DNA of 64,000 bases. Source: Hypanus sabinus. Lineage: Eukaryota. The position numbers and the translations under genes were made by a program. The stretch covers positions 53,258,001-53,322,000 of the forward strand of contig NC_082709.1 in NCBI RefSeq assembly GCF_030144855.1, written 5' to 3'. A model generated the notes under the pieces. That model searched no databases. It was not told the DNA's origin and worked only from the letters and a program-made list of their open reading frames with translations. How positions within the stretch are numbered: position 1 is the stretch's first letter; every line of letters starts with the position of its first letter. This document shows, piece by piece, positions 4,165 through 62,977 of this stretch.

Positions 4165-4169
4165 GAGAG

Positions 4170-4225
<56 letters not shown>
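4165..4225. repeat. (GA)n microsatellite in 5'UTR of copy A
   Basis: About 30 GA units between TATA and ATG; only short GA runs in B and C. Confidence 0.95.
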
Positions 4226-4271: not shown

Positions 4272-7200
4272 ATGAAAATTTTCCTGCTTGTCATCACTGC
4301 TGTGCAGATTCTCTACTGCTCAGGTAAGTACTGGGGAGAACGGAAAACTAGAGAACAGAATGTTGTTGGTACTGAAGTTGTTGGTTCAGTCAGCAACATT
4401 TCACCCAGGTGTGAGAAGAATTCACAGAGTTTTTTTGGGATACCTTGTATGACTTCTGCTCTCTCTCTGCAGGAATGCCAAGCACCAAGGAAGCTCTGAG
4501 AGCCTCAGTTATAAAGCTGAATGAAATCACCGAGATCACCAACCTCTGTGGTATCTCCAGGAGAGGCGTGACAAATGTAAGTGTGCCTTTGGCTAATTGT
4601 GTTTCACAAACTATGGACATGTCTGAGTGCAGGGTAATTGTTTACTTAAACCTACCTTAAGAGTAGTTTAACAGCAAAAAACAAATCAAATATGACGTTT
4701 TGTAATAGGGAGAATAAATTGTAACATTATGGGGATTTGATGAGAAGGAGAGAGGGATTGATGGGATTTTTCAGCTGGGAGCCAGTATAAACCTGAAGGG
4801 CTGAGTGGCCATGAACTGCATATATCTTATTGTGAGGTGCATTTTAAGATAAGATAGAATCTAGGCATTCAACAGGAGCTGAATTTCATATTATCTACAG
4901 AGTTCAGCAATTTAGTACTCAATCAGTGTTTGAGTTGTGGAACTTTGATTGGACCAAAGTTTCAGAATTAAGGTTGGAAGTTCTGCCAGTCTTTGATTTG
5001 CAAGTCACTGAAAATTTTCCCAAATTTGTTAGTTAATTTCCTTCAGTAATTATGGATTCATGCAAACTTAGCATCCCTAACATGATAGTTTAAGTGACAG
5101 TTTTACCATTGGGCAAAGTAATTCTCTTGTCCATTTTGGTTGATTACTCAGACACGACCAATGTAACCATCAGCTGGAAATAGAGCCTCCATAACTCTGA
5201 GTTTTCTCAGTTCAGTGGAAGAATACCAGATGCAACAATTCACCAATGATCTCATTTCCTTCCTTCAGACATACCGTACGGGTAAACTGTCCTACAGCGT
5301 GGATTTAACGTTCTCTGTGATAGAGACTGTCTGCTCCAAGAATTCTGGACAGGAATTTGATGATCCCAGTTGCTCTTTCCACCCTAAAAACATTGCGGTG
5401 AGTCCAGAGTTATATTAGATCTTGCAAGTCCGTGTATGTTCTAACATCAAAATACAGGCTTTAATTAAAGCCTATTTCATAGAAATGACTATCGGTACGT
5501 AATTATATCAAAGGAAAGGCTAAGAATTGGGTTAGTTGCTAATCATGTTGATTTATTGTCTTGTTTGGAATCATGAATAATTTCCATTCATTATGCTTCA
5601 TTCCAACAGGAGAAAGGGTTTTGCAAAAGCCATGTGGAATTTTTTGCTGATGAGGTAGCTGACGTTGATGTGGAGTGTGATGGTCTGAAGACAGTTGACA
5701 GTGAGAGTGACTCCACAGAATCCAGTGAAAACAGTATTGAGGTAACTGCATTCATACAATTCAGCGCAACTGAATTTCTAACAGAAGATCCTTTACTGAA
5801 CATTTCATTGTTTATGTATGCTGAAGATCTAAAAATAAATGTCTTTATCTTACAGGCGCAAAGCAAATCAAAAGAAACATCACTTGAGGAAACCTTAAAT
5901 GTGAGTATTAATCAGTAATTTATCAGATTTTTTTCTTGTTGATCTCAATTGTTCATGATGAAATGATTATAATTCTTAGCAATGAAATTTTACATTCTCC
6001 ATTAGGAATTGTGACAGCATGTTATGGTAGTCATGGGAGATTTTAACATGCAGGTCGATTGGGAAAATCAGGTTGGTAATGGATCTCAGGAGAGTGAGTT
6101 TGTTGAATGCCTAAAAGATAGCTTTTTAGAGCATTTTCTTGTTGAGCTTTCTAGGGGATCAGCAATACTGGATTGGGTGTTATGTAAAGAACCAGAGGCG
6201 ATTTGGGAGCTTAAAGTAGAAGAACCCTTAGGAATCGGTGATCACAATGTGATTGTGTTCAACTTGAAATTTGATCATGGGAAAGTAAAGACTGATGTAG
6301 CAGTATTTCAGTGGAGTAAGGGAAATTACAGTGGTGTGAGAGAGGAGTTGGCCAAAGTAAATTGGAAAGAGCTGCTGTCAGAGATCTCAGTAGAATTGCA
6401 GTGGTGTGCGTTTCTGGGGAAAATGAGGAAGGTGCAAGACATGTGTATTCCAAAAATGAAGAAATACTCAAAAGGTAAAATAGTACAACTGTGGCTGACA
6501 TGGGAAGTCAAAACTATTGTAAAAACAAATGAATGGGCATATAACAAAGCAAAAATTAGTCGGAAGATAGAGGATTGGGAAATTTTTAAAAATCTACAGA
6601 GAACAACTTGAAAATCATTGGAAGGGAACAGATGAAATATGAAAGCAAGCTAGCAAATAATATCAAAGTAGATAGTAAAAGATTTCTCAAGTTAAAAATA
6701 AAGGAGAAATGTGACTGGATATAGGATCACTAGAAAATGAGGCAGGAGAAATAATAACGGGGGACAAGGAGATGGCTGCTGAACTAAATGAGTATTTTGT
6801 ATCAGTCTTCATTGTGGAAAACACTAGCTGTGTGCCTGATGTTCTAGTGTGTGAAGGAAGAGAAGTGGGTGCAGTTACTATTACAAGGGAGAAGATGCTC
6901 AAAAAGTTGGAAAACCTAAAGACATATAAATAACCCGGACCAGATGAACGGCATCCTGAGGTCTGAAAGAGGTAGCGTTAGAGATTGTGGTGACATTAGA
7001 AATGATCTTTCAAAAATCATTGGACTCTGGCATGGTGCCAGTGGACTGGAAAATTTCAAATGTCCCTTCACTCTTTAAGAAAGGAGGAATGCAGCAGAAA
7101 AGAAATTATAGACCAGTTAGCCTGACCTCAGTGGTTGGGAAGATGTTAGTTAGTTGGTAAGGATGAGATGATGGAGTACTTGGTAACACAGGACAAGATA

Positions 7201-10200
7201 ATACAAAGTCAGCATGGTTTCCTTCAGGGAAAATCCTGCCTGATGAACCTGTTGGAATTTTTTGAAGAGATTACAGGTAGGATAGATAAAGGGAATTTTG
7301 TATATTTGGACTTTCAGAAGGCCTTTGACAAGGTGCCACACATGAGGCTGCTTACCAAGTTAAGAGCCCATGTTACTACAGGGAAGTTATTAACACGGTT
7401 AGAGCATTGGCTGATTAGTAGGAGGCAGCAAGTGGGAATAAAAGGATCCTTTTCTGGTTGGCTGCCAGGGGTGTTCTGCAGGGGTTGGTGTTGGGACTAG
7501 ATCTTTTTATGCTGTATATAAATGATTTAGATGATGAAATATTTGGCTTTGATGGTGAAATTGTGGAATTTATTGCCACTTGCAGCTGTGGAGGCCAGGT
7601 CGTTGGGTGTACTTAAGGCAGAAATTGATAGGTTCTTGATTGGATGTGGCATCAAAGGTTACGGGGAGAAGGCTGGGAACTGGGGTTGAGGAGATAGAAA
7701 AAAGGATCAGGCTTGATTGAATGGCAGAGCAGACTCGATAGGCTAGAAGGCCTAATCCTGTTCCTATGTCTTATGATCTTACAGTCTATGGTCTTATCCC
7801 AGTCTGATGTGTAGGGAGGGGGTCCTAATATTAGATTTCAGTGTGTGATGAGTTTGTTCTCTGCTGGAGATGAACTGAACATCAGCAGAACAGGACTACA
7901 GGAGAAGTGTCTGTCAGACTCTCATCACTGAGATTCACCAAGAACCAATCCTTCCATGGATTCAATAAAATAAACGGTAATGATGCCTGTTTCACCTATT
8001 GTCAGAATATCCATTCAATCTGCTGCTGACATTTTTTTGAATATCAGTGTAGTGTAGAGAGAATTTTTACTGAAGCTTCTACAAACTAATGCTAGTTCAT
8101 GTGATTATCATTCAGAAATGTCAGGATTAATAGCTCCATCCATAATTTGGCATTCTGGTCTATTATTTGATGATAATGCTTTAGATTTACTAAATATATC
8201 TTGCACTAATGCTATAAATGTACATTTTTATACAGGCAAAAAGCAAATCAGAAGAAACTTCACTGGAATTATTAGCAAATGTAAGTCTAATTTGGGAGTT
8301 GATATCTTCAGTTTCTCAATAAGTTGTGATACCTAGATTGATTTGTCAGAATAGAGTCTAGGGATCTTAATTCATTCTTGGCCTGTTCCAAACAGTGGGG
8401 GTGAGAAGACAGAGAGAATATTGAATATTAGTTAGTGCCCACCTCAAACCATTTTCTTATAGTAAAACTGTAAACCTTGATTCCCTTAATATCCTACAAT
8501 CCACCAATCCCTATTTTGAATGAACTTGCAACTGAGCCTCCACAGCTCTCTGGGGGTAGCAAATTCCAAAGATTCACCATCTGAGTTTCACCTCATTCCA
8601 TGTTGGCCAAGCTATTATTTTGAGACTGTAAGCCAAGCTGTCAACTCCTTAGACAGGTGAAAACCCTTCCCCTGATATCCAATCAAATCCTCTCATAATT
8701 TTGCTTATGGTTAGGCAATCATTTGTCCTATCTGTAATGAATAGTCTATCATAATTAATCTCTCCTCATGCGACAGATCCACGTTAATGGGCACTATACT
8801 AGTATAACTTTGCAATATCCTCTGTCTCAAGCATATCAGATAAGCAACCAAAATTTCACAATCCTCACAGGGCTCGATACAATTGTAGTATTCTTCTTTC
8901 CAAGTCCTCTTGCTATAAAAATAACCTGCTTTCCTAATGGCCTGCTGCATTTGCTGCTGAAATGCCCAGAGTGAACAAAGTCTCCATTATATTTCAATAT
9001 TTAATACTTGAGCAAACTGGGGATTTTTCAGTTTATATATTATCAAAGTTCTTCACTGTCCTGTAGTAAACATTAAAATATTATTTCCGTACAGGAAAAA
9101 GACAAATCAAAAGAGACATCTCTTGAAAACTCAGCTGATGTGAGTATAACTGGAAAAAAATTCAGATGAACTTTTTGATCTTGTCATTAAGTAAACACGT
9201 TAAACATATTCGATTCGACTTTGTCAGAATAGAAGGAGAGAGGGCAATTTAGACCATAAGATACAAGACAAATAAGCAGAATTAGGCCATTTTGCCCAAA
9301 AATCTGCTCCACTAACTTTAGGTCAGTGCATTGAGAAAGGGATTATGTTATTTGATTTCTGTTAGGAAGTTTGACTGAGGGGCTCCAATACAGAGAATGA
9401 GTTTGCTTCCCCTCAAGGATAAAGTGAGCTGGAAATCAACAGGATTGGGTACTAGGTGTGAGGGCAAAGTCTCTAACACTCACCAATTACAGAGTTGAAG
9501 TGATGGTGCAGAACAGCTTCAATACACCAATGCGATTAATTGTGTGAGAGTGACATTTTCCCCAATTTATATGCAGACACCCCACACCTCACTTTATTTA
9601 GGCTACATTGATCATTATATGGAATGTAATTGTTCTGGCAGGGACTTCTCCAGTGCGATAATAAATTAAAAATCGTGATATTCCTAGTTTTGTTCAAAGG
9701 TTACCCCACAAACTTTCATAACTTAACATGCTAAGCATATAAATATTGATCTTTTCATGCAGGTCAAGAGCAAGTCAAAAGAGACATCAGTCGAGGAGTC
9801 TTCTAATGTAAGTCTAATCTTGGAATTTCTATCTATTAATTTTTAAACATAATGTACAGATAAAACCTAATTTGGGCAAACATAATTAAATGACTACCTA
9901 GATCAGGAAGAGGATGGCATATTAATGCACAGATTCTCTGTGGATGCCCTGAGGATGCCCATCATTAGCCTGAGTGTGAGTTTGTTCTTCACTAAATTTT
10001 GAAATAGAATTTGAAAAGTCTATTGGGGACAATCATGGTCTGTGGATTGATATTTCTGGTAGTTTCATGAAAGGAGGATCCATTGCATTTCTCTCATTTA
10101 ACTGAGTTTAACTATGAGCTCAGGGTCTAGAAGTGTATGGCATTGATGTCAACACTGAGACCTTCGTTCATTGGGTTGAACAGGGACCAACTTGAGTCCC

Positions 10201-10607
10201 AGCTGTCTATATGTTATGCAAGGCAATACTAAATCAGGGCATATCACTTAAAAATCTTTCTTATCTATGGAACTGTCCAAATGCATTTTAAATGTCACAT
10301 TTCAACCTGTCTCTACCAATTCTATTGGCTGTTCCTTCCATAAGTTGTAAAGTTTTTGATATGGATCTATCACTGATGTGAAAATCTGATTTTATCTCAT
10401 AAAACAGATGAAAAGCAAATCAATGGAATTATCACTGGAGGAACCTTCAAACGTAAGTATAAACTGAAGCTTTGTGACTGATGTGATCATCATTAAAACT
10501 AATGACAAAATATTGATGTCAGAGTGAGCTCAGTCCAGCTGAAAATTACAAACCTGTTCATCTTTCTATTCCAGGAACAAAATGAGGACTCGAGAGCCCA
10601 GCACTGA
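4272..10607 (+). CDS. SPP2: SPP2 (secreted phosphoprotein 24)-like secreted phosphoprotein with SxE repeat tail, copy A (10 coding exons, 224 aa)
   Basis: Manually spliced, all GT-AG and in frame: 4272-4323, 4473-4576, 5269-5397, 5610-5741, 5856-5900, 8236-8280, 9095-9139, 9763-9807, 10408-10452, 10575-10607(TGA). Protein: MKIFLLVITAVQILYCSG-MPSTKEALRASVIKLNEITEITNLCGISRRGVTN-TYRTGKLSYSVDLTFSVIETVCSKNSGQEFDDPSCSFHPKNIA-EKGFCKSHVEFFADEVADVDVECDGLKTVDSESDSTESSENSIE-AQSKSKETSLEETLN-AKSKSEETSLELLAN-EKDKSKETSLENSAD-VKSKSKETSVEESSN-MKSKSMELSLEEPSN-EQNEDSRAQH. The signal peptide ends in CSG. Motifs AL.ASV.K.N, L.FS..ET.C.K.SG, C.F and C.S.V...A..V..V...C followed by a Ser-rich tract match SPP2 as I recall it. 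The symbol denotes the family, not proven orthology. Confidence 0.88.
6024..7796 (+). mobile_element. CR1-type LINE fragment (ORF2 endonuclease/RT, decayed) in intron 5 of copy A
   Basis: VMGDFN, LDWVL, GDHN, QHGF..GKSCL.NLLEFFE and YLDFQKAFDKVPH motifs; CR1-type tail (cttatg repeats); absent in copy B. Confidence 0.9.
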
Positions 10608-10820
10608 CCATGAATGGAACTCCACAGAGTCTGAACTCAACGTGAACACAAGAAGACCTCATTCAGAATTTACAAGATGTTAACAATTGTACTGGACTCA
10701 TCCTGTCTGAGACTGAGGAGCCTGGAGCTCCTGACTGTACGTTTTGTTGTAAATGGGAGATTCGATTGTTTGTAAATGTTCTGTTGTTTGTATATTATTG
10801 TTTAATGTATTGTGGATCAA

Positions 10821-10834
10821 AATAAATTAATAAA
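10821..10834 (+). terminator. Poly(A) signal(s) of copy A
   Basis: Two AATAAA about 220 bp after the stop codon, followed by a GT/T-rich tract; position conserved in B and C. Confidence 0.7.
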
Positions 10835-10952
10835 TACAATATGGTATATTCACGGAACTGCTTCTGGAAGTTGTTTTGTTTGTCACTGACCTACAGGAGT
10901 TCATCCAGTTATTATGCTCAGGTTCACCTGTCCCTTGCCGATAGTGTATCTG

Positions 10953-11235
10953 CTTTGTCTGGTGGGACCTCCAGATGTGGGGCCACTTGCTGGTGCAGAT
11001 ACTTTGTCTGGTGAGACCTCCTGATGTGGGGCCACCTGCTGGTGCAGATGCTTTGTCTGGTGGGACCTCCTGATGTGGGGCCACCTGCTGGTGCAGATAC
11101 TTTGTCTGGTGAGACCTCCTGATGTGGGGCCACCTGCTGGTGCAGATGCTTTGTCTGGTGGGACCTCCTGATGTGGGGCCACCTGCTGGTGCAGATACTT
11201 TGTCTGGTGAGACCTCCTGATGTGGAGCCACCTGG
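10953..11235. repeat. 49-bp minisatellite, ~5.8 units
   Basis: Unit ctttgtctggtg(g/a)gacctcctgatgtggggccacctgctggtgcagat(a/g), starting at 10953, 11002, 11051, 11100, 11149, 11198. Confidence 0.95.
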
Positions 11236-12224
11236 TGATGTATCTCCTTTTTCTGTTGGAATCTCCTGTTACATTATCTAATTTGCTGCCTTAAGATCAG
11301 CATCAAGCATTGAATGATTTGCAGCCAGTTTAAAGTCCCTGGATTGTTCAATCCTACCTTTTAAATTTTGTTAAAATCTCCCAATGGGAATGTTTTGAAG
11401 GAATGAGACTTTGGGGCCCAGGAGACATTTTATACATAATTAGGAATGAGGTATCAGTGAAACGAACATCTGCCTCATTGCAGCAGCTCTTTTATAAACA
11501 CAAGAAATTCTGCAAGTGCTGGAAATCGAAGCAACACACACAAAATGCTGAAAGAACTCAGCAGGTTAGGCAGCTTCTATGGAAATCAATAAACGGTTGA
11601 AGTTCCTGGCCAAGGTCCTTTATCTGGGCTGGAAAGGAAGTGGGTAGATGTTGGAATAAAAAAGGTGGGGAGTGGGGAAGGAGCTGACAGGTGAAGGCAG
11701 GTGGGTTGTAATGGGAAGGTCTGCAGAGGAAGGAATCTGATAGGAGAGGAGAGTGGACCACAGGAGCAAGGGAAGGCAGAGGGGACCCAGGGTTGGGGGG
11801 AGGGTGGGGTTCCTGTGATGGGTCTACAACTCTCTGCAGTCTTTTTCAATCCTGTGCCTTGGAGCCTTCATACCAGCTGCCAATGTAACCATTTAGAAAG
11901 CTCGTCACTCTACATCTGTAGAAATTCACAAGAATCTTTGGTGACATACCAAATCTTCTCAAACTACGAATGAAGTAGAGCTACTGGGATGTGCCTTCTT
12001 TGTAGTTGCATCAAATTATTGGGACCAAGATAGATTCTCTGAGATGTTGACACTCAGGAAATTGAAACTGCTCACCTTTTCCACCACTGACACCCAAATG
12101 AACACTGGTATGCATTTTCCTGACTTCCCCTTCCTGAAGTTAATCATTTCCTTGATCTTGTTGACTCTGAATGAGACTTTAATGTTGGGGCACCATTTAA
12201 TGATCTGATCTATCACAGAGTCAT

Positions 12225-21659: not shown

Positions 21660-24600
21660 ATGAAAACTTTCCTGCTTGCCATTGCTGCTGTGCAGATCCT
21701 CTACTGCTCAGGTAAGTACTGGGGAGAACGGAAACCCAAAGAGCAGGAAGTTGTTGGTACTGAACATCAAGCAGTGACATTTCACCGAGGTGTGAGAAGA
21801 ATTCACAGAGGTTTTTTGGAATGCATATTGTATGACTTCCCCTCTCTCTCTGCAGGAATGCCAAGCACCAAAGAAGCTCTGAGAGCCTCGGTTATAAAGC
21901 TGAATGAAATCACCGAGATCACCAACCTCTGTGGTATCTCCAGGGGAGGTGTGACAAATGTAAGTGTGCCTTTGGCTAATTGTGTTTCACAAACTATGGA
22001 CATGTCTGAGTGCAGGGTAACTGTCCACTTAAGCCTGCCCTAAGAGTAGACTAACAACAAAAAAAAAATCAAAGGATAGATGATGTTTTATAATAGGGAG
22101 AATAAGTTGTAACATTATGGGGATTTGATGAGAGAGAGAGTGGGATTGATGGGATTGGTCTGCTGGGAGCCCATATTACCTGAAGGGCTGATTAGCCTCA
22201 AACTGCATAATTCAAACTATGAGATAAATTTTAAGATAAGATGGAATCTAAGTATTCAACGGGAGCTGAATATTATATTGTGTATAGAATGGTCAGCTTT
22301 TTAATTCTCTATCAGTGTTTGAGTTGTGCAACTTTGATTGGACCAAAGCTTTGGAATTAAGTTTGGAAGTTCAACCAATCTTTGATTTGGAAGTCACTAA
22401 AAGTTTTTCCAAATACGTTAGTTAATTTCCTCCAATAGTTATGGATTCATGCAAACTGAGTATCCCTATCGTGATGGTTTAAGTGACAATTTTACCATTG
22501 GGCAAAGTAATTCTCTTGTCCATTTTGGTTGATTGTTGTTGTAACCACTGTTAAAGTCTCTGTAACTCTGAGTTTTATCAGGCCAGTGGAAAAACACCAA
22601 AGGTAATAATTCACCAATTATCCTTCTCCCTTTCTTAAGACATATCGTACAGGTAAACTATCCTACAGTGTGGATTTAACATTCTCTGTGAAAGAAACTG
22701 ACTGCTCCAAGAATTCTGGACAAGAATTTGATGATCCCAGTTGTTCTTTCCGCCCTAAAAACATTGCGGTGAGTCCAGAGTTATATTAAATCTTGCAAGT
22801 CCGTGTATGTTTTAACATCAAAATACAGGCTTTAATTACAGCCTGTTTGATAGAAATGGCCATACATATCCAGTCATTTGAAAGTAAAGGCTAAGAATTG
22901 AGTTAGATCATAATCATGTTGACTTCATGTCGTGCTTGGAATCATGAATAATTTCCTTACATTGTGCTTCATTCTAACAGGGGAAAGGGTTTTGCAAAAG
23001 CCATGTGGAATTTTTTGCTGATAAGGTAGCTGACGTTGATGTGGAGTGTGACGGTCTGAAGACAGTTGACAGTGAGAGTGACTCAACAGAATCGAGTGAA
23101 AACAGTATTGAGGTAACAACATTCATACAATTCAGGACAAAGGAATTTCTAACACAAGATCCTTTACTGAACATTTCATTGCTTATTTATGCTGAAGATC
23201 TAAAAATAAGAATCTTTATCTTACAGGCACAAAGGCAATCAAAAGAAAAATCACTTGAGGAAATCTCAGATGTGAGTATTAATCAGTAATTTATCAGATT
23301 TTTTTCTTGCTGATCTCAATTGTTCATGATGGGGTGATTATAATTGTTTGCAATGAAATGTTAAGTTCTCCATTAGGAATAGTGGATGAGACAGCATGTA
23401 ATCCCAGTCTGATGTGTAGGGACGGGATCCTAATGTTAGATTTCAGTGTGTGATGAGTTGCTTCTCTGCTGGAGATGAACTGAGCATCAGCAGAACAGGA
23501 CTACAGGAGAAGTGTCTGTCAGACTCTCATCACTGAGATTCACCAAGTACCAATCCTTCCATGGATTCAATAAAACAGATGGCAATGATGCCTATAGCAA
23601 CTGTGGCAGGAATATCCATTCACTCTGCTCCTTACAGTTTTTTGAATATCAGTGTAGTATAGAGAGATTTTTTTTGAAGCTTCTGCAATCTAACACTAAT
23701 TCGTAGGATTATCATTCAGAAATGTTAGGATTAATAACTGTCCATTGATAATTCAACATTCTGGTCTATTATTTGGTAATAATGTTTTAGATTTACTAAA
23801 TATACCTTGTACTAATGATATAATTGTACATGTTTTTATATAGGTGAGAAGCAGATCAGAAGAAACTTCACCAGAAATATCTTCAAATGTAAGTTTAATT
23901 TAGGATTTGATATCCAGTTTCTCAATAAGATATGAAACCTAGGTCGATCTGTCAGAATAGAGTCTGAGGATCTTACGTCATTCTTGACTGTTCTAGATGG
24001 TGGGTGTGACAGACAGTGAGAACATTGAATATTAGCTTCTACCTCAAAGCATTTTCCTGTCATAACACTGTAAGCTTTGATTCCCTTAAAATCAAACAAT
24101 TCTTCCAATCCCTGTTTTGAATGAACTTGCAATTGAGACTCCCCAGCTCTCCGGGGTAGCGAATTCCAAAGATTCACCATTTGAGTTTCACCTCATTCCT
24201 CATTGACCAAACTCTTATTTTGACACTATGAGCCAGGGTCTCAACTCCACAGATTAGTGAAAACCCTTTCCCTGATAAGCAATCAAGCCCTCTCACAATT
24301 TTGTTCACCTCTCATTCTTTCAATCCGTAATGAGTAGAGTCTATCGCACTTAATCTCTCCTCATGTGGCAGATGTATTTTCATGGGTAGTATACTTGTAT
24401 AACTTTGTTCTATCCTCTGTCTCAAGCATATCCTTCTTCAGATAAGCAGACCAAAACCACACGGTCCTCACCAGGGCTCAATACAATTACAGTATTCTTT
24501 TTTTCAAGTCCTCTTGCAATAAAGATAATTTGCCTTCCCAATGGCCAGCTGTAGTTGCTGCTGTAATGCCCAGAATGAACAAAGACTCCGTTATATTTCA

Positions 24601-27228
24601 ATATTTAATACGTGCAAACTGGGAATTTTTCAGTTTATATGTTTTCAAAATTCCTCACTGCCCTGTACTAAATATATAAATATTATATCCATACAGGAAG
24701 AAGACAAATCAAAAGAGACATCTCTTGAGGAGTCAGTTGATGTGAGTATAAATGGAAAAAAAGGTGATCTTTTGGATCTTGACGCTAAGTAAATATGTTA
24801 AACATATTGGATTCAGCTATGTCAGAGTAGAGGGAGAAAGGGCCATTTAGACCATAAAATATAAGATATAGGAGCAGAATAAGGCCATTTGGTCATCTAG
24901 TCTGCACCACTTTCTTTAGGTCAGTCTATTGAGATAGGTATTGTGATGTTTGATTCCTGTGGGGAAGTTTGACTGAGGCGCTCCAATACAGAAGATGAGT
25001 TTGCCCTCAAGGATGCCCAAGTTTGCCCTTGAGTTTATCCTCAAGGATAAATTATTGACAAGATTGGGTGCTGGATACGAGGGCAAAGTCTGTAACAATC
25101 ACCAATTACAGAGACCAAGTGATGGTGAAGATCAGCTTCAACACACCAATACCAATTAATTGGGTGAGAGTGACAATTTCCCCAAATTATCTACAGACCC
25201 CTCACACTTCACATTATCCAGGTGATATGATTATTTTTGCAGAATGTAGTTGTTCTGATGAGCACTTGTCCACTGCAGTAATAGATTTTAAAAGGGGATA
25301 AAAACTAGGTTTATAAATAATTGAATCTTTAAAGGGTTTGTTCTCAGGTTATTTCATAAACTTTCATAAATTAACATGCTAAGCATATAAATATTGATCT
25401 TTTCATGCAGGTCAAGAGCAAGTCAAAAGAGACATCAGTCGAGGAGTCTTCTGATGTAAGTCTAATCTTGGAATTGTTATCTATTGATTTTCACCCATAA
25501 TATACTGACAAAACCTAATTTGGGCAAACATAATTAAATGACTACCTAGATCAGGGAGAGCATGGCATATTAATTCACAGATTCTCTGTGGATGCCCTGT
25601 GGATGCCCATCATTAGCCTGAGTGTGAGTTTGTTCTTCACTAAATTTTGAAATAGACTTTGAAAGGACACTCTCTCCTGGGGACAATCATGGTCTGTGGA
25701 TTGATATTTCTGGTAGTTTCATGAAAGGAGGATCCTCTCATTTAAATCACTATAACTATTGGCTCTGAGTCTACAAGTGTATGGTGCAGGGAGATGTCAG
25801 CACTGAGACTTTCCACTGGTCAGGTCAACGTAGAATTTGTGTCCCAGCTGTCTACGTGGCACACAAGCCGGTACATAAGCCAAGGTAGTATGATATGGAG
25901 AGCAAGCTGTTGTCTATGTAGCAGGTTCACCCTCTCTATGTAGCTGATGAATCCAAAGGATGGCAGAGACTGATACAGCTTGGCACCAGTGGTGTTACGG
26001 GAGTTGCCAGTCAGCTTTGAACTCAACATAAGACTGCAGATCCAGAGTTTTCCTTGTGGGTTATTCCGAAAGCCATTCCCATGGGTGGCTGTAGACGCAA
26101 TGCAGTGGAGGTTTGAGATCAGAATATTCATTCTCCAAGATGAACTGCTAACCACAGCTGATGAGCCCCATGTGCCTGAAGCAACTAGTTTTAAAGTTCC
26201 AGTAAACCATCTTTGCCCCTCCATCTTTCAGTAGCAACCGTTCCATTGACTTAGTAACTAACGTACATGTGAAGGCCTGGAGCTTGGTTTGATTGTCAGA
26301 GGCTATTTGAAATGTATGCTACTGGGAGCATTTAATAGGTAGTGGGAGCTTATCCCCACTACAACAGTGCCTATAACAACCTCAAGCAATCAAAGTCAGC
26401 ACAGTGGAGAACAAATGAAGGAATCAATCACCCCTCCTAGATTAATAGAATCATCGAGTAATACAATGCAGGAGCTAGTCCTTTGTCCAATTCATCTGTG
26501 CTGAACAAGTTTTCTACATTTGGCCTATATCTCTTAAATATCTTTCGTTATCAATGGACTGTCCAAATGCATTTTATATGTCACATTTCTACTGGTCATT
26601 CATGTCATAAAACCACCATCTTTATTTGAAAAAATTGCCCCTCACCTCACTTTTGAATCTTCCCCGTTGCACTTTAAATCTATGTTCTCTCACTTTAGAC
26701 TCCTTTACCCTGAGGAAATTACTTTGGCTATTCACCTTATCTATTCCTCTCCAAATTTTATTAACCTGTACAGTATTACATCTTCACCTACTTTCTTGCA
26801 CTTCAGAGAATCAACTCCTCACCTATCCAGCCTTTCCTTACGCAACAAACCCTCCAGCCTTGGTAATATCTTCACAATTCTTGTTTGCGTCTTCTTCAAG
26901 AAAGTGACATTCTTTGTAATTGAGTCCACTATGTTAATACTTTGCTGAAATTCAGATTAATTGTGAAGTGAAGTTTTTGATCTGGATCTATCACTGATTT
27001 GCAAATCTGATTTTATCTTGTAAAACAGATGAAAAGCAAGTCAACAGAATTATCATTGGAGGAGCCTTCAAACGTAAGTATAAACTGAAGCTTTGTGTCT
27101 GATATGATCATCCTTAAAACTAATGACCAGACTTTGACATCAGAGTGAGCTCAGTCCAGCTGAAATTTACAAATCTGTTCACCTTTCCATTCCAGGAACA
27201 AAATGAGGACTCGCGATCCCGTCACTAA
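21660..27228 (+). CDS. SPP2: SPP2-like SxE-repeat secreted phosphoprotein, copy B (10 coding exons, 224 aa)
   Basis: Exons 21660-21711, 21856-21959, 22640-22768 (AAG acceptor), 22981-23112, 23227-23271 (AQRQSKEKSLEEISD), 23844-23888 (VRSRSEETSPEISSN), 24697-24741 (EEDKSKETSLEESVD), 25411-25455 (VKSKSKETSVEESSD), 27029-27073 (MKSKSTELSLEEPSN), 27196-27228 (EQNEDSRSRH*). Open frame; same exon sizes and phases as copy A. Confidence 0.88.
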
Positions 27229-27576: not shown

Positions 27577-27801
27577 CTTTGTCTGGTGGGACATCCTGAT
27601 GTGGGGCCACCTGCTGGTGCAGATACTTTGTCTGGTGAGACCTCCTGATGTGGGGCCACCTGCTGGTGCAGATGCTTTGTCTGGTGGGACATCCTGATGT
27701 GGGGCCACCTGCTGGTGCAGATACTTTGTCTGGTGAGACCTCCTGATGTGGGGCCACCTGCTGGTGCAGATACTTTGTCTGGTGGGACCTCCAGATGTGG
27801 G
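27577..27801. repeat. 49-bp minisatellite, ~4.6 units (paralogous to 10953-11235)
   Basis: Same unit at the same position downstream of the copy B poly(A) signal. Confidence 0.95.
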
Positions 27802-40565: not shown

Positions 40566-43500
40566 ATGAAAACTTGCCTGCTCGCCATCATTGCCGTACA
40601 GATCCTCTACTGCTCAGGCAAGTACTGGGGAGAGAGGGACCCCAGAGAGCAATAACTTTTTGGTGCTGAGCTTCAGTCAGTGATGTTTCACCCATGTGTA
40701 AGAAAAATTCGCTGAAGTTGGTTGGAATGTATTTTAGAACTTTTTCTCTTTCTCTCTCTGCAGGAATGCCAAGCACTAAGGAAGCTCTGAGAGCCTCGGT
40801 TATAAAGCTGAATGAAATCACTGAGATCACCAACCTCTGTGGTATCACTAGGAGAGGAGTGACAAATGTAAGTGGGTCCTTGGAGAATTGTGTTTCACGG
40901 TCCATGGATGCATCAGAGTATAGATTAATAGGCTACTAAAAGTTAGCCTGAGAGTAGGTTAACAGCAAAAAAAAAATCAAAGGGGAGATGCTGATGTGGT
41001 TGAGACAATAACTTACAGTATTATGGGTATTTGAGGAAAGGGGAATAGGATTGATGGATTGTTTCGCTGAGAGCTAGTGTAGGCTTGAAGGGCTGAGTGG
41101 CCTCAAACTGTACAATTTTAAGTATAAGGTATATTTAGGATATGATGGTGACCAAGTACTAAACTGGAGCTGAATATTACATTATATGCAGAACTTACAC
41201 TGAATATCAGATCAGGATCATAAATTCTCTATCAGTATTTGAGTTGTGAATCTCTGATTGGACCAATGTTTTGGAATTAAGATTGGATGTTCTACCATTT
41301 GTTCATCTGGAAGCCCCTGAAAGGTTTTCAAATTTTGTTTGTCATTTTCCACCAATAATTAGGAGTTCCTGCAAACTGATATTCCTATCCTGATGGTTTA
41401 AGTTGTCATTTTACTATCGGGCAATTTAAATCTCTTGTCTATTTTGGCTGATGATTCAGATGCTGTCAGTGTAACTATCTGGTGGGAAAAAAGCCCTGTG
41501 TAGCTCTGCTCTTTGTCAGACCAGTGGAAGAACACCAGAGATAACAAAGCACTAATAAACTCTTCTCCTTCCTTCAGACATATCGCACAGGTAAACTTTC
41601 CTACAGTGTGGATTTAACGTTCTCTGTGAAAGAAACTGTCTGCTCCAAGAATTCTGGACAGGAATTTGATGATCCCAGCTGCTCCTTCCGCCCTAAAAGC
41701 ATTGCGGTGAGTCCAGAGTTATATCTTAGATTATACGTCCGTGTGTGTATTAGCATTAAAACACGAGCTTTAATTACAACCTATTTCATAGAAATGAGCA
41801 TAGATATGGACAGAAAGGCTAAGAATTGGGTTAGATCATAATCACTTTGATTTACATTCTTGCTTGGAGTCATCAATAATTTCCTTGCACTATGCTTCAT
41901 CCCAACAGGAGAAAGGGTTTTGCAAAAGCCATGTGGAATTTTTTGCTGATAAGGTAGCTGACGTTGATGTGGAGTGTGACAGTCTGAAGACAGTTGACAG
42001 CGAGAGTGACTCGACAGAATCGAGTGAAACCAGTATTGAGGTACAGAATCTGCAATCTGGTCAATGGGATTTCTAACACAAGATATTCACTAAACATTAG
42101 AATATATTAGTGTGGTATGCTGAAGATCTAAATATAAATATCTTTATCTTACAGGCCCAAACCAAATCAAAAGAGACATCACTAGAGGAAACCTCAAATG
42201 TGAGTATTACTTAATAATTCATCAGATGTTTTTTCATGCTGATCTCAATTGTTAGTAACGGAGTGATTATAATTGCTAGCAATGAAATGTTAAGCTCTTC
42301 ATTAGAAATAGTGGGTGAGATGGCATATTATCCTAGTCTGGTGTGCAGGGAGGGGATTCTAACATTCTAACAGTGCATGCTGAGTTTAGTCTCCAGTAAA
42401 GATGAACTGACCACCAGCAGAACAGGACTGAAAGAGGAGTGTCTATAAAACCCACACCAATGGGAGTAACATTTTATTGATTCCTGGAGGGGAATCATAG
42501 ATTCAGTAAAAAAGATGATAATCGGAGCTGTGCCACCTATTGTAGGAATATCCATTGACCCTACACCAGACATTTAGCCAGGCACTTTTCTGAACATTGG
42601 TGTACGGTAGAGACTGGGGATTTTATTGAGGCTTGTGCAATTTTATGATCGGTCATAGGATCTTCATTCGGCAATGTCAGGATTGACAATCCTTTATTTA
42701 GCATTAAGTATGCAAGTCTGCTCTTTGGAGGAAAACTATTAATGTTTTCTATTTATTGGAGGTCACCTATTAATGCTTTCTGTCCTATTGTGTTAATATT
42801 AGAATGTTGATGTTTTTTATGTAGGTTGAAAATAAGTCAGAAGAAACTTCAGTGGAAGAAGAATCTCTAAACGTAAGTTTAATTTGGAAAATATTACCTT
42901 CAGATTCTCAGTAAGATGTGAAACCTTGACTGATCTGTCAGAATACCGAGGATATTGCTTCATAGTAGGCTTGTTCCAGACTGTGGTTGAGAGAGAGAGA
43001 AGACGGAGAAAATATTGAATATTAACTTCTACCTCAAACCATTTTCCTATGGTAACACTGCAATTCTTGATTTCCTTAATATCCATCAATCCACCAATTA
43101 CTGTTCAGAATTAACTCAGTGAATGAGCCTTCACAACTCTCTGGGGTAGCAAGTTCCAAAGATTCACCATCTTGGTGAAGAGATTACATCTCACCTCATT
43201 TCTAATTGGTCACTCCCTTATTCTGCGACTGCAACCCAAGCTCTCAACTCCTTAGATAGGCAAAATATCCCACCTTTCTAACCAGTCAAGACCTCTCATA
43301 ATTTTGTTCACTGTAAGGCAATTACCTCTCATTCTTTCAAGCTGTGAATAATAAATGTGCCATATGCACCATCCCAGACTCTACCCAGGTGGAACTATGC
43401 TTCATCCTTCTTCACAAGCATATCATTTTTCAGATCAACCGACCAAAACTACACAATCCTCACCAGAGCTTGATACAACTGTCGTACTCTTTTTCTTAAG

Positions 43501-45708
43501 CCTTCTTGCAATAAAGGCAATTTGCCTTCCCAATGGCCTGCTGCATTTGCTGCTGAAAAGCCCAGAAATAACATAGACTCTGTTATATTTCAATATTTAA
43601 TACTTGTGCAAGCCGGGAATTTTTCAGTTTATGTGTTTTCAAAATTTCTCACTGCCCTGTACTAAACATATAAATATTATTTCCACACAGAAAAAAGACA
43701 AATCAAAAGAGACATCTCTTGAAGATTCAGCTGATGTGAGTATAGGTGGAAAAAAATGCTGATGAAATATTTGATCCTGGTTGCAAGTTAAAATGTTTAA
43801 CATCTCGGACTTGACCATGTTAGAAGAGAGGAAAAGAGAACCATTTATTTTGATCAGTGCATCGAGAAAGACATTCTGTGATTTGATTCCTGTGGGGAAA
43901 TCGGGCTGAGAGGCAAATTGAGACTCCAATACAGAGAATGAGTTTGTTCCCTCAAGGATAAAGTGACCTAGATATTAACCAGATTGTGTGTTAGACATGA
44001 GGGCAGCGTCTGTAACATTCACCAATTATAGACCAAATGTTGGTGGGATTGACACTGTTTCCTGAATTATCTTCTGACCCCACCTCCGCCCAAACCTCAC
44101 AATATCCAAACTACATTGATCGCTGTTGCAGATATTAATTGCTTTGGTGAGCAATTATCCACTGCTGTACTGAATCTCAAAGCCTGATATATTTATGGTC
44201 ATTTCTAATTCAATCATTAAAGATTTGTTCAAAGATTACTCCACAAATCTTTATTAATATACGTGCTAAGCATATAAATATCGATTTTTTTTTCATGCAG
44301 GTAGACAGCAAGTCAAAAGAGACATCAGTCGAGGAGTCTTCAATTGTAAGTCTAATCTTGGAATTTTTATCTATTGATTTTCAACCATAATATAGTGATG
44401 AAACCTAATTTGAATAAACTTTATTAATGACTATCTAAAGCAGGGGTTCCCAACCTGAGGCCCACGGTCTCCTTGCATTATAGTACTGGTCCTTGGCATA
44501 AAAAAGGTAGGGAACCCTGGATCTAGAGATCGATAGAGGTGCATATAAATGCACAAATTCGATAAGATATTCTCCATTCAATTCCTGATGATGCCCAACT
44601 TCAGCCTGAATATGAGTTTGATCTTCACTTAATATTGAAATAGAATTAGGAAGGGCAATCATGGTCTGTGGAAAGATATACTGTAACTGTGGCTTCATGA
44701 AAGGAGCATCTCTTAAATTTCCTCATTTAATTGTATATAATTACTGGCACAGAGGCTAGAAGTGTATGGTGCTGAGATATGTCAGCCCAGTCAAGACCAA
44801 TTGGTAAAAGAATCATCTCTCCGAGCTTCATAGGGTCACAGGGTTATACAATGCAGTAACAGATCACTTGATTCAATTCATCAGTGCTGACCAAGTTGCC
44901 TAAGTCAGCTCATCCCATTTCTCTGCATTTGGCCTATATCCCTTGAAACTTTTCCCATCTACTAAGCTGTCCAAATGCATTATAAATGCCACCATTGTAT
45001 CTTCCTCTACCAATTCCTCTAGCAGATCATTCCATAAATCCACCACCACTGTGAAAAAATATTCCCCTCTGATCACTTTTAAATCTCTCCTTTCTGATGT
45101 TAAACTTGCGGTGTCCAATTTTAGAGTGTCCTACCCTCTGGAAAATACTTTGGCTCTCTGTTTTATAATTTTATAAACCTAAATTACATCTTTATCCATC
45201 TTCCTATGGTCAACGAAAACATCTCCAGGTCTATCCATCTCCTTATAACCAAAGCCCTCCAGACTTAGTAGCAGATCCATATATCTTTTGTGCTCCCTCT
45301 CCAATATAATGCCATCCTTTGTAACATTCAATCTTAGAGTCCCATTGCCTTTAGAGTTTGCTGAAATTAAAATTGATAGTGGTGTTTGCTGTGGATTTCT
45401 CACTAACCTAACAGTTCTGAAATTAAAGTGATTTCACACACCCAATTACAAACTGAACCTCATTTGACTTTGTATCCAGAAATGATTTCTAATACTTCAA
45501 AATTTTAACTTATAAAACAGATGAAAAGCAAATCAACAGAATTATCATTGGAGGAGCCTTCAAAGGTAAGTATAAACTGCGACTTTGTGTCTGATATGAT
45601 CATTATTAAAACTAATGAGAAAACATTGACGTCAGAGTGAGCTCAGTCCAGCTGAAAATTACAAATCTGTTCATCTTTCCATTCCAGGAACAAAACGAGG
45701 ACTCGTGA
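40566..45708 (+). CDS. SPP2: SPP2-like SxE-repeat secreted phosphoprotein, copy C (10 coding exons, 221 aa)
   Basis: Exons 40566-40617 (GC donor, CAG|GCAAGT), 40764-40867, 41578-41706, 41909-42040, 42155-42199 (AQTKSKETSLEETSN), 42825-42872 (48 nt, VENKSEETSVEEESLN), 43691-43735 (KKDKSKETSLEDSAD), 44301-44345 (VDSKSKETSVEESSI), 45521-45565 (MKSKSTELSLEEPSK), 45688-45708 (EQNEDS*). Confidence 0.85.
44441..44520. mobile_element. 80-bp hAT MITE in intron 8 of copy C
   Basis: TIRs caggggttcccaacct / aggtagggaaccctg; 8-bp TSD atctaaag / atctagag; absent from A and B. Confidence 0.8.
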
Positions 45709-45940
45709 GCCCAGCACTGACCATGAATGAAACTCCGCAGAGTCTGAACTCAATGTGAACACAAGAAGACCTCATTCAGAATCTATGAGATATTAACAAT
45801 TGTACCTTACTCATCCTGTCTGAGACTGAGGGGCCTGGAGCTCCTGTCCGTACATTTTGTTGTAAACGGGAGATTCGATTGTAAATGTTCTGTCCTTTGT
45901 TGTATATTATTGTTTAATATATTATGGATCAAATTATAGT

Positions 45941-61513: not shown

Positions 61514-62977
61514 ATGAAATCCTTCCTGCTCACTCTCGCTGCCATGCAGATCCTGCACTGCTCAGGTAAGTACTGGGGAGATAGAGACCTCAGAAAGCAG
61601 TAAGTTGTTGGTTCGGTGCCTTAGTCAATGATATTTCATCCATGCGTAAGCGGAATTCAATTAGGTTCATTGGAATCTGTTCTACAACCTTCCCTCTCCC
61701 TCTGCAGGAGTGCCACGCACCAAGGAAGCTCTGAGAGCCTCAGTAATAAAGCTGAATGAAATCACCGAGATCCCCAACCTCTGTGGTATCTCCAGGAGAG
61801 GCGTGACAAATGTAAGTGTGTCCTTGGCTAATCGTAGTTCACAAAATATGGATGCGTCTGGGTGCAGGTTAATTTGCTACTAAAACTTACCCTAAGGGTA
61901 GGTTAGCAAGAACAAAAATCAAATGGGAGATGATGCTATGTGATAGGGAGAAAAACTTGCAGAAGATGATATTATATAAAGAGTTTTCCATGTATATCAG
62001 ATCAGTACTTCGAATTCTCAATCAATATTTCAGTTGTGGAACTCTGATTGCGCCAAAGTTTTATAATTAAGTTTGGAAATTCTTCCAGTCTTTGATTTGG
62101 AAATCACTGAAAGTTTTCACAAATATTGTTTGCTAATTTCCTCCCATAATTAAGGGTTCCTGCAAACTGAGTATCCTTATCATGACAGTTTAAGTGGCAA
62201 TTTTCCATTGAACAAATTAATTATCTTGTCTATTTTGACTAATCTAGTGTACCATCATCTGTAAATAAAACCCTGTGTAGCTCTGCTCTTTGTCAGACCA
62301 GTGGAAGAGCAGTAGAGATAACAATGCACTAATAACCTCCTTTCCTCTCTTCAGACATATTGCACAGGTAACCTGTCATACGGCGTGGATTTAACATTCT
62401 CTGTGAAAGAAACTGTCTGCTCCAAGAATTCTGGACAGGAATTTGATGATCCCAGCTGCTCCTTCCACTCTAAAAACATTGCGGTGAGTCCAGAGTTATA
62501 TTAGATCTTGCAAGTGCTTGTATGTTTTAGGATTAAAACACAAACTATAATTACAACCCTTTTCATAGAAATGACCATACATATATGTAGCTATATCTAA
62601 TTAAAGGCTAAGAATTGTGTTAGATCATAATCACATAGATTTTGTGTGTTGCTTGGTATCATGAATAATTTCCATTCATTATGCTTCATTCTAACAGGAG
62701 AAAGGGTTTTGCAAAAGCCATGTGGAATTTTTTGCTGATAAGGTAGCTGACGTTGATGTGGAGTGTGGTGGTCTGAAGACAGTTGACAGTGAGAGTGATT
62801 TGACAGAATCGAGTGAAAACAGTATTGAGGTAACTGCATTCATACAATTCAGCGCAATCGAATTTCTAACAGAAGATCCTTTACTGAACATTTCATTGTT
62901 TATGTATGCTGACGAATATCTTTATCTTACAGGCGCAAAGCAAATCAAATGAAACATCACTTGAGGAAACCTCAAAT
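61514..62977 (+). CDS. SPP2: SPP2-like SxE-repeat secreted phosphoprotein, copy D (partial, exons 1-5; continues past window end)
   Basis: Exons 61514-61565 (MKSFLLTLAAMQILHCSG), 61708-61811, 62355-62483, 62698-62829, 62933-62977 (AQSKSNETSLEETSN). Canonical splice sites, no stops. Intron 5 homologous sequence runs to 64000. Confidence 0.85.

What the first reader, a model, noticed from the sequence alone, without database searches (positions are those of the whole stretch)
5856..10452. Tail built by serial duplication of a 45-nt symmetric (phase 0-0) micro-exon
Seen: five 15-codon exons per gene (A: 5856, 8236, 9095, 9763, 10408), consensus x-x-S-K-S-K-E-T-S-L-E-E-x-S-N, each flanked by yAG and GT(A/G)AGT. 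All 16 such exons visible across the four copies keep both S-x-E motifs (SKE/SEE/SME/STE/SNE and SLE/SVE/SPE) while other positions vary, which points to selection on the phosphosites. A further S-x-E spans the last junction (SN|E in A and B, SK|E in C). Established: small phase-0 SxE exons are the hallmark of casein/SCPP gene evolution. Inference: convergent exon-level architecture; symmetric exons also allow in-frame skipping that could tune phosphate load.
Basis: partly seen in the sequence, partly recalled or inferred. Interest (0 to 1): 0.85.

Follow-up and report, generated by a model that had tools for sequence, protein, structure and literature searches.

The report
Stingray Spp24 genes with micro-exon phosphoserine tails
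The window holds four tandem copies of a stingray secreted-phosphoprotein-24 (spp2) gene whose acidic tail is made of repeated 45-base exons, each coding two Ser-x-Glu phosphorylation motifs; the exons are real and spliced, but the gene family and its Ser-x-Glu-rich tails were published in 2026, so only the exon-level account is new.

Summary
A strict scan and a profile search both find exactly 16 such exons in the 64 kb, all on the + strand: 5 in copy A, 5 in B, 5 in C (one is 48 nt) and 1 in D before the window ends. All are phase 0-0 with AG/GTRAGT borders.

Of the 15 aligned residues, only S5, E7, S9 and E11 never vary. The first two codon positions differ at 0/144 sites in those codons against 62/396 in the other codons. 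RNA contigs join C's micro-exons 3→4→5 exactly at the predicted GT..AG borders.

The genes are not SCPPs. [quoted passage not shown] Conceptual proteins A–C match, apart from one omitted module each in A and C, the RefSeq Hypanus sabinus proteins XP_059822077, XP_059822078 and XP_059821946. D matches XP_059821947 over the part inside the window.

All four are in the Spp2 alignment of Debiais-Thibaud et al., BMC Biol 2026 (PMC13188829). That paper already reports the tandem expansion, the SxE accumulation, expression in mineralising chondrocytes and the SCPP analogy. It never mentions exons.

So the serial micro-exon duplication, which predates the gene copies, is a modest addition. Exon skipping stays unproven. 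The scan flagged the same architecture 26 kb upstream of this window's start (s1-210419).

The parts
4272..4323 (+). Gene A exon 1: start codon and signal peptide (MKIFLLVITAVQILYCS); the following intron is phase 1
   Evidence: the gene A model matches XP_059822077 in the paper's alignment except for module 5, which the RefSeq model omits
4473..4576 (+). Gene A exon 2: N-terminal part of the cystatin-like domain
5269..5397 (+). Gene A exon 3: core of the Spp-24 cystatin-like domain
   Evidence: Pfam PF07448, E 7e-5, 23.3 bits for this exon alone
5610..5741 (+). Gene A exon 4: end of the cystatin-like domain plus the Ser-rich stretch DSESDSTESSENSIE
   Evidence: RNA contigs of a paralog cover exactly this exon
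5856..5900 (+). A micro-exon 1 (AQSKSKETSLEETLN)
8236..8280 (+). A micro-exon 2 (AKSKSEETSLELLAN)
9095..9139 (+). A micro-exon 3 (EKDKSKETSLENSAD)
9763..9807 (+). A micro-exon 4 (VKSKSKETSVEESSN)
10408..10452 (+). A micro-exon 5 (MKSKSMELSLEEPSN); absent from the RefSeq protein model of A
10575..10607 (+). Gene A last coding exon (EQNEDSRAQH, stop); 3'UTR with AATAAA signals near 10823-10840
21660..23112 (+). Gene B exons 1-4 (21660-21711, 21856-21959, 22640-22768, 22981-23112)
   Evidence: Pfam Spp-24 25.4 bits on exon 3
23227..27073 (+). Gene B micro-exons 1-5, starting at 23227, 23844, 24697, 25411 and 27029 (45 nt each); all five are in RefSeq XP_059822078
27196..27228 (+). Gene B last coding exon (EQNEDSRSRH)
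40566..42040 (+). Gene C exons 1-4 (40566-40617 with a GC donor, 40764-40867, 41578-41706, 41909-42040)
   Evidence: RNA contigs of paralogs join exon 1 to exon 2 and exon 4 to micro-exon 1
42155..45565 (+). Gene C micro-exons: 42155-42199, 42825-42872 (48 nt), 43691-43735, 44301-44345, 45521-45565
   Evidence: RNA joints 43735->44301 and 44345->45521, both GT..AG
45688..45720 (+). Gene C last coding exon; a TGA ends the protein three residues early (…EQNEDS)
   Evidence: the RefSeq protein ends the same way
61708..62829 (+). Gene D exons 2-4 (61708-61811, 62355-62483, 62698-62829); exon 1 was not located by my search
62933..62977 (+). Gene D micro-exon 1 (AQSKSNETSLEETSN); the rest of the gene lies beyond the window

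Best explanation
The window is part of the tandem spp2 (secreted phosphoprotein 24-like) gene cluster of the Atlantic stingray Hypanus sabinus. It holds copies LOC132392263, -264, -115 and -116 (A, B, C and D here), which resemble the spp2.2/2.3-type copies of the 2026 paper. Each gene encodes a signal peptide and a cystatin-like Spp-24 domain that ends in a Ser-rich stretch (exons 1-4). An array of 45-nt phase 0-0 exons follows. Each of these codes one 15-residue module (x-K-S-K-S-K-E-T-S-L-E-E-x-S-N) with two S-x-E motifs. A short terminal exon closes the protein. The array arose by old serial duplication of one micro-exon. That happened before the gene copies duplicated and, judging from the same modules in shark and skate proteins, probably before sharks and rays split. 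Since then the four S and E residues have been held by purifying selection while the spacer residues drift (tail dN/dS 0.3-0.6, head 0.12-0.14). Inferred mechanism: mineralising chondrocytes secrete the protein and the Golgi kinase Fam20C phosphorylates the S-x-E serines. Gene A has 14 such motifs, 12.9 per 100 residues in the tail. The resulting polyanionic, disordered tail would bind calcium or calcium phosphate and modulate the mineralisation of cartilage. Shown here: the exons, their phases and number, their splicing into RNA, the site-specific constraint and the family identity. Taken from the paper: expression in mineralising cartilage in catshark and thornback ray. Inferred: phosphorylation and mineral binding.
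For: The gene models are complete and in frame: A and B give 224 aa, C gives 221 aa because a TGA ends it three codons early. Exon 3 of all four copies has Pfam Spp-24 (PF07448) as its best family, E 1e-5 to 7e-5. Conceptual protein B matches XP_059822078; A and C match XP_059822077 and XP_059821946 except for one omitted module each; D matches XP_059821947 over the part inside the window. All four are in the paper's Spp2 alignment. The paper reports the tandem expansion, the SxE accumulation and expression in mineralising chondrocytes. Exactly 16 micro-exons are present. Serial exons are 53-75% identical against a 43% null, and orthologous exons are 77-97% identical. The S and E columns are invariant, 0/144 against 62/396 differences. 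dN/dS values are. Spliced RNA contigs give joints 43735->44301 and 44345->45521 with 0-1 mismatch to C, and paralog contigs join exon 4 to micro-exon 1 and exon 1 to exon 2. A de novo transcript of Raja clavata carries the same modules.
Against: No RNA run held gene A's own 3' exon, so splicing is shown directly only for C and for unidentified paralogs. The runs are Logan contigs whose RNA status is guessed. The last 41 nt of the 155-nt contig were not placed. Pfam scores fall just under the curated whole-protein cut-off (23.3-25.9 against 26 bits), because only single exons could be submitted. Phosphorylation, mineral binding and stingray tissue expression were not tested. The clade (spp2.3 or spp2.2) was not read from the paper's tree.
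Confidence: 0.88

Rival explanations
1. The genes are true members of the SCPP/casein lineage, derived from SPARC-L, rather than a convergent look-alike.
For: They have S-x-E motifs on small phase-0 exons, form a tandem gene cluster and encode secreted acidic proteins.
Against: The head is a folded cystatin-like Spp-24 domain. The start codon and signal peptide sit in the first coding exon and are followed by a phase-1 intron. The proteins are listed as Spp2 in a published phylogeny, at a locus flanked by sh3bp4/arl4c/nme9/vps8. The elasmobranch scpp gene is a different gene derived from sparc-L 5' exons.
Confidence: 0.01
2. The invariance of the S and E codons reflects nucleotide-level constraint rather than selection on phosphorylation sites. 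Purine-rich exonic splicing enhancers may be needed for the spliceosome to recognise 45-nt exons.
For: The exons are rich in GAA/AAG. Codon S5 is TCA in 16/16 exons with no synonymous variant. Third positions of the S and E codons differ at 6.9% of sites, against 23% for other third positions.
Against: E7 is GAA in 9 exons and GAG in 7. E11 is GAG in 11 and GAA in 5. S9 is TCA in 13 and TCT in 3. Synonymous change is therefore tolerated, while non-synonymous change is 0/144. The same S-x-E spacing is kept in sharks, skates and rays. The two constraints can also coexist.
Confidence: 0.1
3. The micro-exons are cassette exons, and regulated in-frame skipping sets the number of phosphorylatable modules per protein.
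For: All are phase 0-0. The RefSeq protein of A lacks micro-exon 5 and that of C lacks micro-exon 3. An RNA contig contains the C3-C4 junction. Another contig joins micro-exon 1 to micro-exon 3, but with 'between: not known'.
Against: RefSeq omissions may be modelling choices. The micro-exon 1 to 3 joint comes from a paralog and may hide an unaligned exon. Short-read contigs of near-identical paralogs can be chimeric. No isoform pair was seen for one gene.
Confidence: 0.25
4. The exon-like units are chance or annotation artefacts and are not spliced.
For: None after testing.
Against: There are 16 profile hits at E <= 2e-9, and the next best hit has E = 0.25. Exact GT..AG joints are seen in RNA contigs. 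The modules are present in a de novo skate transcript.
Confidence: 0.01

Closest known systems
Chondrichthyan spp2.2/spp2.3 genes (Debiais-Thibaud et al., BMC Biol 2026;24:121, PMC13188829)
   Same: These are the same genes. The four window proteins are in that paper's alignment. [quoted passage not shown]
   Different: The paper works at the protein and expression level. The words exon, intron and splic- do not occur in it. It does not state that each SxE pair is one 45-nt phase-0 exon, that the array predates the gene copies, or that only S5, E7, S9 and E11 are invariant.
SCPP genes, including caseins (Kawasaki and Weiss), and the elasmobranch scpp (Leurs et al. 2022, PMC9122587)
   Same: Both are secreted acidic phosphoproteins in tandem clusters. 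Both have Fam20C-type S-x-E motifs, small phase-0 exons that can duplicate in frame, and a role in mineralised tissues.
   Different: SCPPs derive from SPARC-L 5' exons, lack a globular domain and share the SPARC signal peptide. The window genes carry a cystatin-like Spp-24 head, have a phase-1 first intron and sit at another locus. [quoted passage not shown]
Bony-vertebrate SPP2/Spp24 (human: 8 exons, 211 aa)
   Same: [quoted passage not shown] It is a mineral-binding plasma and bone protein.
   Different: It is a single gene, expressed in liver, with an Arg-rich C-terminus and no 15-residue SxE module array. The exon sizes of the human tail were not checked here.
[quoted passage not shown]
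   Same: It is an independent case in a cartilaginous fish of SxE sites multiplied by tandem duplication of a short acidic unit.
   Different: It is a different gene. The passages I read do not describe that repeat as separate exons.

Membership tests
Spp2 / Spp24 (Pfam PF07448, cystatin superfamily) | Spp-24 cystatin-like domain recognised by the family profile | tested here: inconclusive
   Only single exons could be submitted by reference. Exon 3 of A, B, C and D has PF07448 as its best family: 23.3, 25.4, 25.9 and 25.1 bits, E 1e-5 to 7e-5, covering profile positions 6-35 of 64. The curated whole-protein cut-off is 26 bits.
Spp2 / Spp24 (Pfam PF07448, cystatin superfamily) | Placement among Spp2 sequences in a published family alignment and phylogeny | tested here: met
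   The conceptual proteins match XP_059822077, XP_059822078, XP_059821946 and XP_059821947 (Hypanus sabinus) in Alignments S2 and S3 of PMC13188829. A and C each differ by one omitted module, and D is compared only over the part inside the window. The clade label for these four was not read.
Spp2 / Spp24 (Pfam PF07448, cystatin superfamily) | N-terminal signal peptide, four conserved cysteines, and a Ser-rich stretch after the domain | tested here: met
   The N-terminus MKIFLLVITAVQILYCSG is hydrophobic. The mature head has five cysteines: one in exon 2, two in exon 3 and two in exon 4. DSESDSTESSENSIE ends exon 4. No signal-peptide predictor was run.
Spp2 / Spp24 (Pfam PF07448, cystatin superfamily) | Arg-rich C-terminal region | tested here: not met
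   The tail has 1 Arg in 85 residues. The paper reports the same loss for catshark spp2.2 and spp2.3, so this marks the subfamily and does not exclude membership.
Spp2 / Spp24 (Pfam PF07448, cystatin superfamily) | Conserved synteny with sh3bp4/arl4c/nme9/vps8 | not tested
   The flanking genes lie outside the 64-kb window. The paper assigns the cluster to chromosome 4 of H. sabinus.
SCPP (secretory calcium-binding phosphoproteins, including caseins) | Origin from SPARC-L 5' exons, with the SPARC-type signal peptide and no globular domain | tested here: not met
   The head is an Spp-24/cathelicidin/cystatin-like domain. The SCPP definition is taken from PMC9122587.
SCPP (secretory calcium-binding phosphoproteins, including caseins) | Introns within the open reading frame in phase 0 | tested here: not met
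   Intron 1 is phase 1 (exon 1 contributes 52 coding nt). All later introns are phase 0.
SCPP (secretory calcium-binding phosphoproteins, including caseins) | S-x-E (Fam20C) motifs on small exons | tested here: met
   Each of the 16 micro-exons carries two S-x-E motifs. This shared trait is the basis of the convergence claim only.
Fam20C substrates | Secretory-pathway protein with S-x-E/pS motifs that are actually phosphorylated | not testable with these tools
   The motifs and the signal peptide are present. Phosphorylation needs mass spectrometry or a kinase assay.

The most novel reading that the evidence does not exclude
Elasmobranch spp2.3 genes would be an independent, SCPP-like toolkit in which the unit of evolution and of regulation is the 45-nt micro-exon. 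The number of di-phosphoserine modules per protein would be tuned by exon gain and loss between paralogs and by cassette-exon skipping within a gene, and this dosage would help set how heavily cartilage mineralises.
Probability: 0.2. Interest if true: 0.55.

Novelty: new member of a known kind. Interest (0 to 1): 0.3.

Why it matters
Cartilaginous fishes lack bone and most SCPP genes, yet they mineralise their cartilage. The 2026 paper proposes the expanded spp2 family as their own mineralisation toolkit. This window shows how the tails of those proteins were built: one 15-codon symmetric exon was copied in series, and selection has held only the two Ser-x-Glu motifs. That gives the published protein-level observation a mechanism. 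It is also a clean second example of the exon logic known from caseins and SCPPs. It yields testable predictions: module number against mineral binding, and isoforms by exon skipping. It does not reveal a new gene family or a new kind of system.

Tried and rejected
1. The first read-laying run on gene A (5200-10900) was swamped by a transposable element in the intron at about 5964-7873. It gave only one useful contig, lying exactly on exon 4.
2. A second run search with A's last micro-exon, terminal exon and 3'UTR found no RNA run holding it. Gene A's own splicing and the status of micro-exon 5 are therefore not shown directly.
3. I looked for intron homology between serial micro-exons to order the duplications. 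The 80-nt flanks are at background (46-62% against a null of 45 +/- 3.7%). Profile searches of 250-nt flanks gave only a weak reciprocal match between the first 40-65 nt downstream of exon types 2 and 4 (E 0.002-0.02 in a very small database). The order of duplication cannot be resolved from this window.
4. I tested whether the micro-exon came from the last 45 nt of exon 4 (DSESDSTESSENSIE). DNA identity is 44-54%, within the null range, so there is no support.
5. I searched for decayed pseudo-exons and found none.
6. I did not submit the spliced full-length protein to the protein, structure or cluster tools. One counting script did contain the typed protein, which I should have avoided.
7. 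I considered cathelicidin, because the gene layout is similar. Cathelicidin and cystatin profiles hit exon 3 more weakly than Spp-24 does (16-18 and 13 bits against about 25 bits).
Full report
**1. What is there**

Reading 5700-6100 shows a 45-nt open exon at 5856-5900 between ...ttacag and gtgagt. Just upstream lies an exon ending in a Ser/Glu-rich stretch.

A strict scan (AG + 45-nt ORF + GT[AG]AG) gives 24 hits on the + strand and none on the - strand. Fifteen of the 24 carry two S-x-E motifs:
- Copy A: 5856, 8236, 9095, 9763, 10408.
- Copy B: 23227, 23844, 24697, 25411, 27029.
- Copy C: 42155, 43691, 44301, 45521.
- Copy D: 62933.

The sixteenth exon is C's second one, at 42825-42872. It has one extra codon (48 nt) and a tAG acceptor. 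A profile HMM of the 16 exons finds exactly these 16 in the 64 kb (E <= 2e-9). The next best hit has E = 0.25, so no decayed copies are present.

Self-comparison shows four tandem gene units spaced about 17-21 kb apart.

**2. Gene model**

Gene A has ten coding exons:
- exon 1, 4272-4323 (start codon and signal peptide);
- exons 2-4, at 4473-4576, 5269-5397 and 5610-5741;
- the five micro-exons;
- the last coding exon, 10575-10607.

The product is 224 aa. Intron 1 is phase 1 and every later intron is phase 0, so each micro-exon is 0-0 symmetric. B (224 aa) and C have the same layout. C has a GC donor in intron 1, and a TGA ends its protein three codons early, giving 221 aa. D runs off the end of the window.

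**3. Identity**

Exon 3 of all four copies, submitted alone, has Pfam Spp-24 (PF07448) as its best family. Scores are 23.3-25.9 bits at E 1e-5 to 7e-5, with weaker cathelicidin and cystatin hits.

A literature search found Debiais-Thibaud et al., BMC Biol 2026;24:121 (PMC13188829). Short peptides from my models occur in that paper's supplementary Spp2 alignments:
- Gene A corresponds to XP_059822077 (LOC132392263).
- Gene B corresponds to XP_059822078 (LOC132392264).
- Gene C corresponds to XP_059821946 (LOC132392115).
- Gene D corresponds to XP_059821947 (LOC132392116).

All four are from Hypanus sabinus, chromosome 4. B matches its RefSeq protein throughout. A and C match except for one omitted module each (section 7). 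D can be compared only over the part inside the window.

The paper reports:
- a single spp2 gene in bony vertebrates, against tandem expansions in cartilaginous fishes;
- clades spp2.1, spp2.2, spp2.3 and spp2.Like;
- expression of spp2.2 and spp2.3 in mineralising chondrocytes of catshark and in thornback-ray jaw cartilage;
- an explicit comparison with SCPP evolution.

The words exon, intron and splic- do not occur in its text.

**4. Are the exons spliced?**

No RNA run held gene A's own 3' exon. The first read-laying run was flooded by a transposable element in A's intron between micro-exons 1 and 2.

Laying the same runs on gene C gave more. A 155-nt contig of run X8 reads 23 nt of micro-exon 3, then 44301-44345 with 0 mismatches, then 45521-45566 with 1 mismatch. 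The joints are 43735->44301 and 44345->45521, both GT..AG and exactly as predicted.

Contigs of 579 nt (X8) and 395 nt (X9), about 92% identical to C's exon 4, come from a paralog. They join exon 4 to micro-exon 1. Another X8 contig joins exon 1 to exon 2.

The Trinity transcript c117360_g3_i2 of Raja clavata carries the same 15-residue modules. The paper gives it 276 TPM in jaw cartilage.

Caveats:
- The runs are Logan contigs whose RNA status is guessed.
- Contigs of paralogs this similar can be chimeric.
- The last 41 nt of the 155-nt contig were not placed.

**5. Serial duplication and its age**

| Comparison | DNA identity | Null |
|---|---|---|
| Different micro-exons of one gene | 53-75% | 43 +/- 5.5%, max 59% |
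| Their 80-nt intron flanks | 46-62% | 45 +/- 3.7%, max 58% |
| Same-position exons across genes | 77-97% | |
| Flanks of same-position exons | 71-93% | |

The five exon types therefore existed before the gene copies arose.

Only the first 40-65 nt downstream of exon types 2 and 4 still match weakly and reciprocally. The order of duplication cannot be resolved from this window.

The paper's alignment shows the same modules in sharks, a skate and other rays. A conserved last module (KSKSTE-type) occurs in Heterodontus, Heptranchias, Rhincodon, Raja, Narcine and Mobula. This suggests the array predates the shark-ray split. That step is an inference from protein sequences; exon maps of those species were not examined.

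**6. Constraint**

Among the 16 modules, only S5, E7, S9 and E11 never vary. A minimum of 46 amino-acid changes falls in the other 11 columns and none in these four. Under an even spread of changes that has P about 6e-7, or about 9e-5 using only the within-type changes. The count ignores finer tree structure.

| Site class, between orthologous exons | Differences |
|---|---|
| Codon positions 1-2 of the S and E codons | 0/144 |
| Codon positions 1-2 of the other codons | 62/396 |

Synonymous variants exist at three of the four codons: GAA/GAG at E7 and E11, and TCA/TCT at S9.

| Region | dN/dS |
|---|---|
| Cystatin-like head | 0.12-0.14 |
| Micro-exon tail | 0.31-0.62 |

Intron distances (JC 0.18-0.29) are close to dS.

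A partial alternative remains: purine-rich splicing enhancers may add nucleotide-level constraint. S5 is TCA in 16/16 exons, and third positions of the S and E codons differ less than other third positions (6.9% against 23%).

**7. Exon skipping**

The RefSeq protein of A contains micro-exons 1-4 but not 5. That of C contains 1, 2, 4 and 5 but not 3. That of B contains all five.

The X8 contig nevertheless shows C3 joined to C4. One paralog contig joins micro-exon 1 to micro-exon 3, with the intervening letters 'not known'. This is compatible with cassette use, but also with modelling choices in RefSeq. I put it at about 0.25.

**8. Mechanism and comparison**

Gene A has 14 S-x-E motifs. That is 6.8 per 100 mature residues and 12.9 per 100 in the tail. 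Four further S-x-S-x-E arrangements could be primed sites.

From established knowledge of Fam20C (S-x-E/pS specificity in the secretory pathway) and of Spp24, fetuin and SCPP proteins, the likely function is a phosphorylated, disordered, calcium-phosphate-binding tail on a cystatin-like head, secreted into mineralising cartilage. Phosphorylation and mineral binding are inferred, not shown.

The genes fail the SCPP membership tests. They have a globular Spp-24 head, no SPARC-L-derived 5' exons and a phase-1 first intron.

Human SPP2 has 8 exons and 211 aa, and no such module array is described for it.

**9. Verdict**

The observation and most of the interpretation hold. The gene family, its SxE-rich tails, its expression and the SCPP analogy are already published, and the exons are in RefSeq models. 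What this window adds is the exon-level account:
- one module per 45-nt phase 0-0 exon;
- duplication older than the gene copies;
- selection focused on four residues.

This is a modest but clean addition. The scan had already flagged the same architecture 26 kb upstream of this window's start (s1-210419).

Noticed in passing
window 10945-11268 and 27577-27801: A 49-nt minisatellite lies a few hundred bases 3' of gene A and of gene B (5.8 and 4.6 copies, 94% matches). An earlier scan note describes a similar array 3' of another copy.
   Followed up: partly
window 4165-4225: A (GA)31 microsatellite lies between a TATAAA-like box (about 4131) and the start codon of gene A, so it is probably inside the 5'UTR. 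Copies B to D were not checked for it.
   Followed up: no
window about 5964-7873: A transposable-element insertion lies in gene A's intron between micro-exons 1 and 2 and is absent from B and C. It is very abundant in contigs of runs labelled as several different organisms and swamped the first read-laying.
   Followed up: partly
window 17454-18305 (+): A 283-aa ORF between genes A and B hits reverse transcriptase (RVT_1) and an ALKBH8_N-like segment. It is a LINE-type retroelement fragment.
   Followed up: partly
window 40618; 45706-45708; 42825-42872: Gene C has three small departures from A and B: a GC instead of GT donor in intron 1, a TGA that ends the protein three residues early, and a 48-nt second micro-exon.
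   Followed up: partly
window 10408-10452 and 43691-43735: The RefSeq protein models omit micro-exon 5 of gene A and micro-exon 3 of gene C, although both have good splice sites and an RNA contig contains the C3-C4 junction. This is either alternative splicing or a modelling choice.
   Followed up: partly
window 47723-48081 and 51738-52091; 48000-52000: A GC-rich block (0.48-0.50, against about 0.40 elsewhere) between genes C and D is bracketed by 360-nt direct repeats 83% identical. It may be an LTR-element remnant.
   Followed up: no
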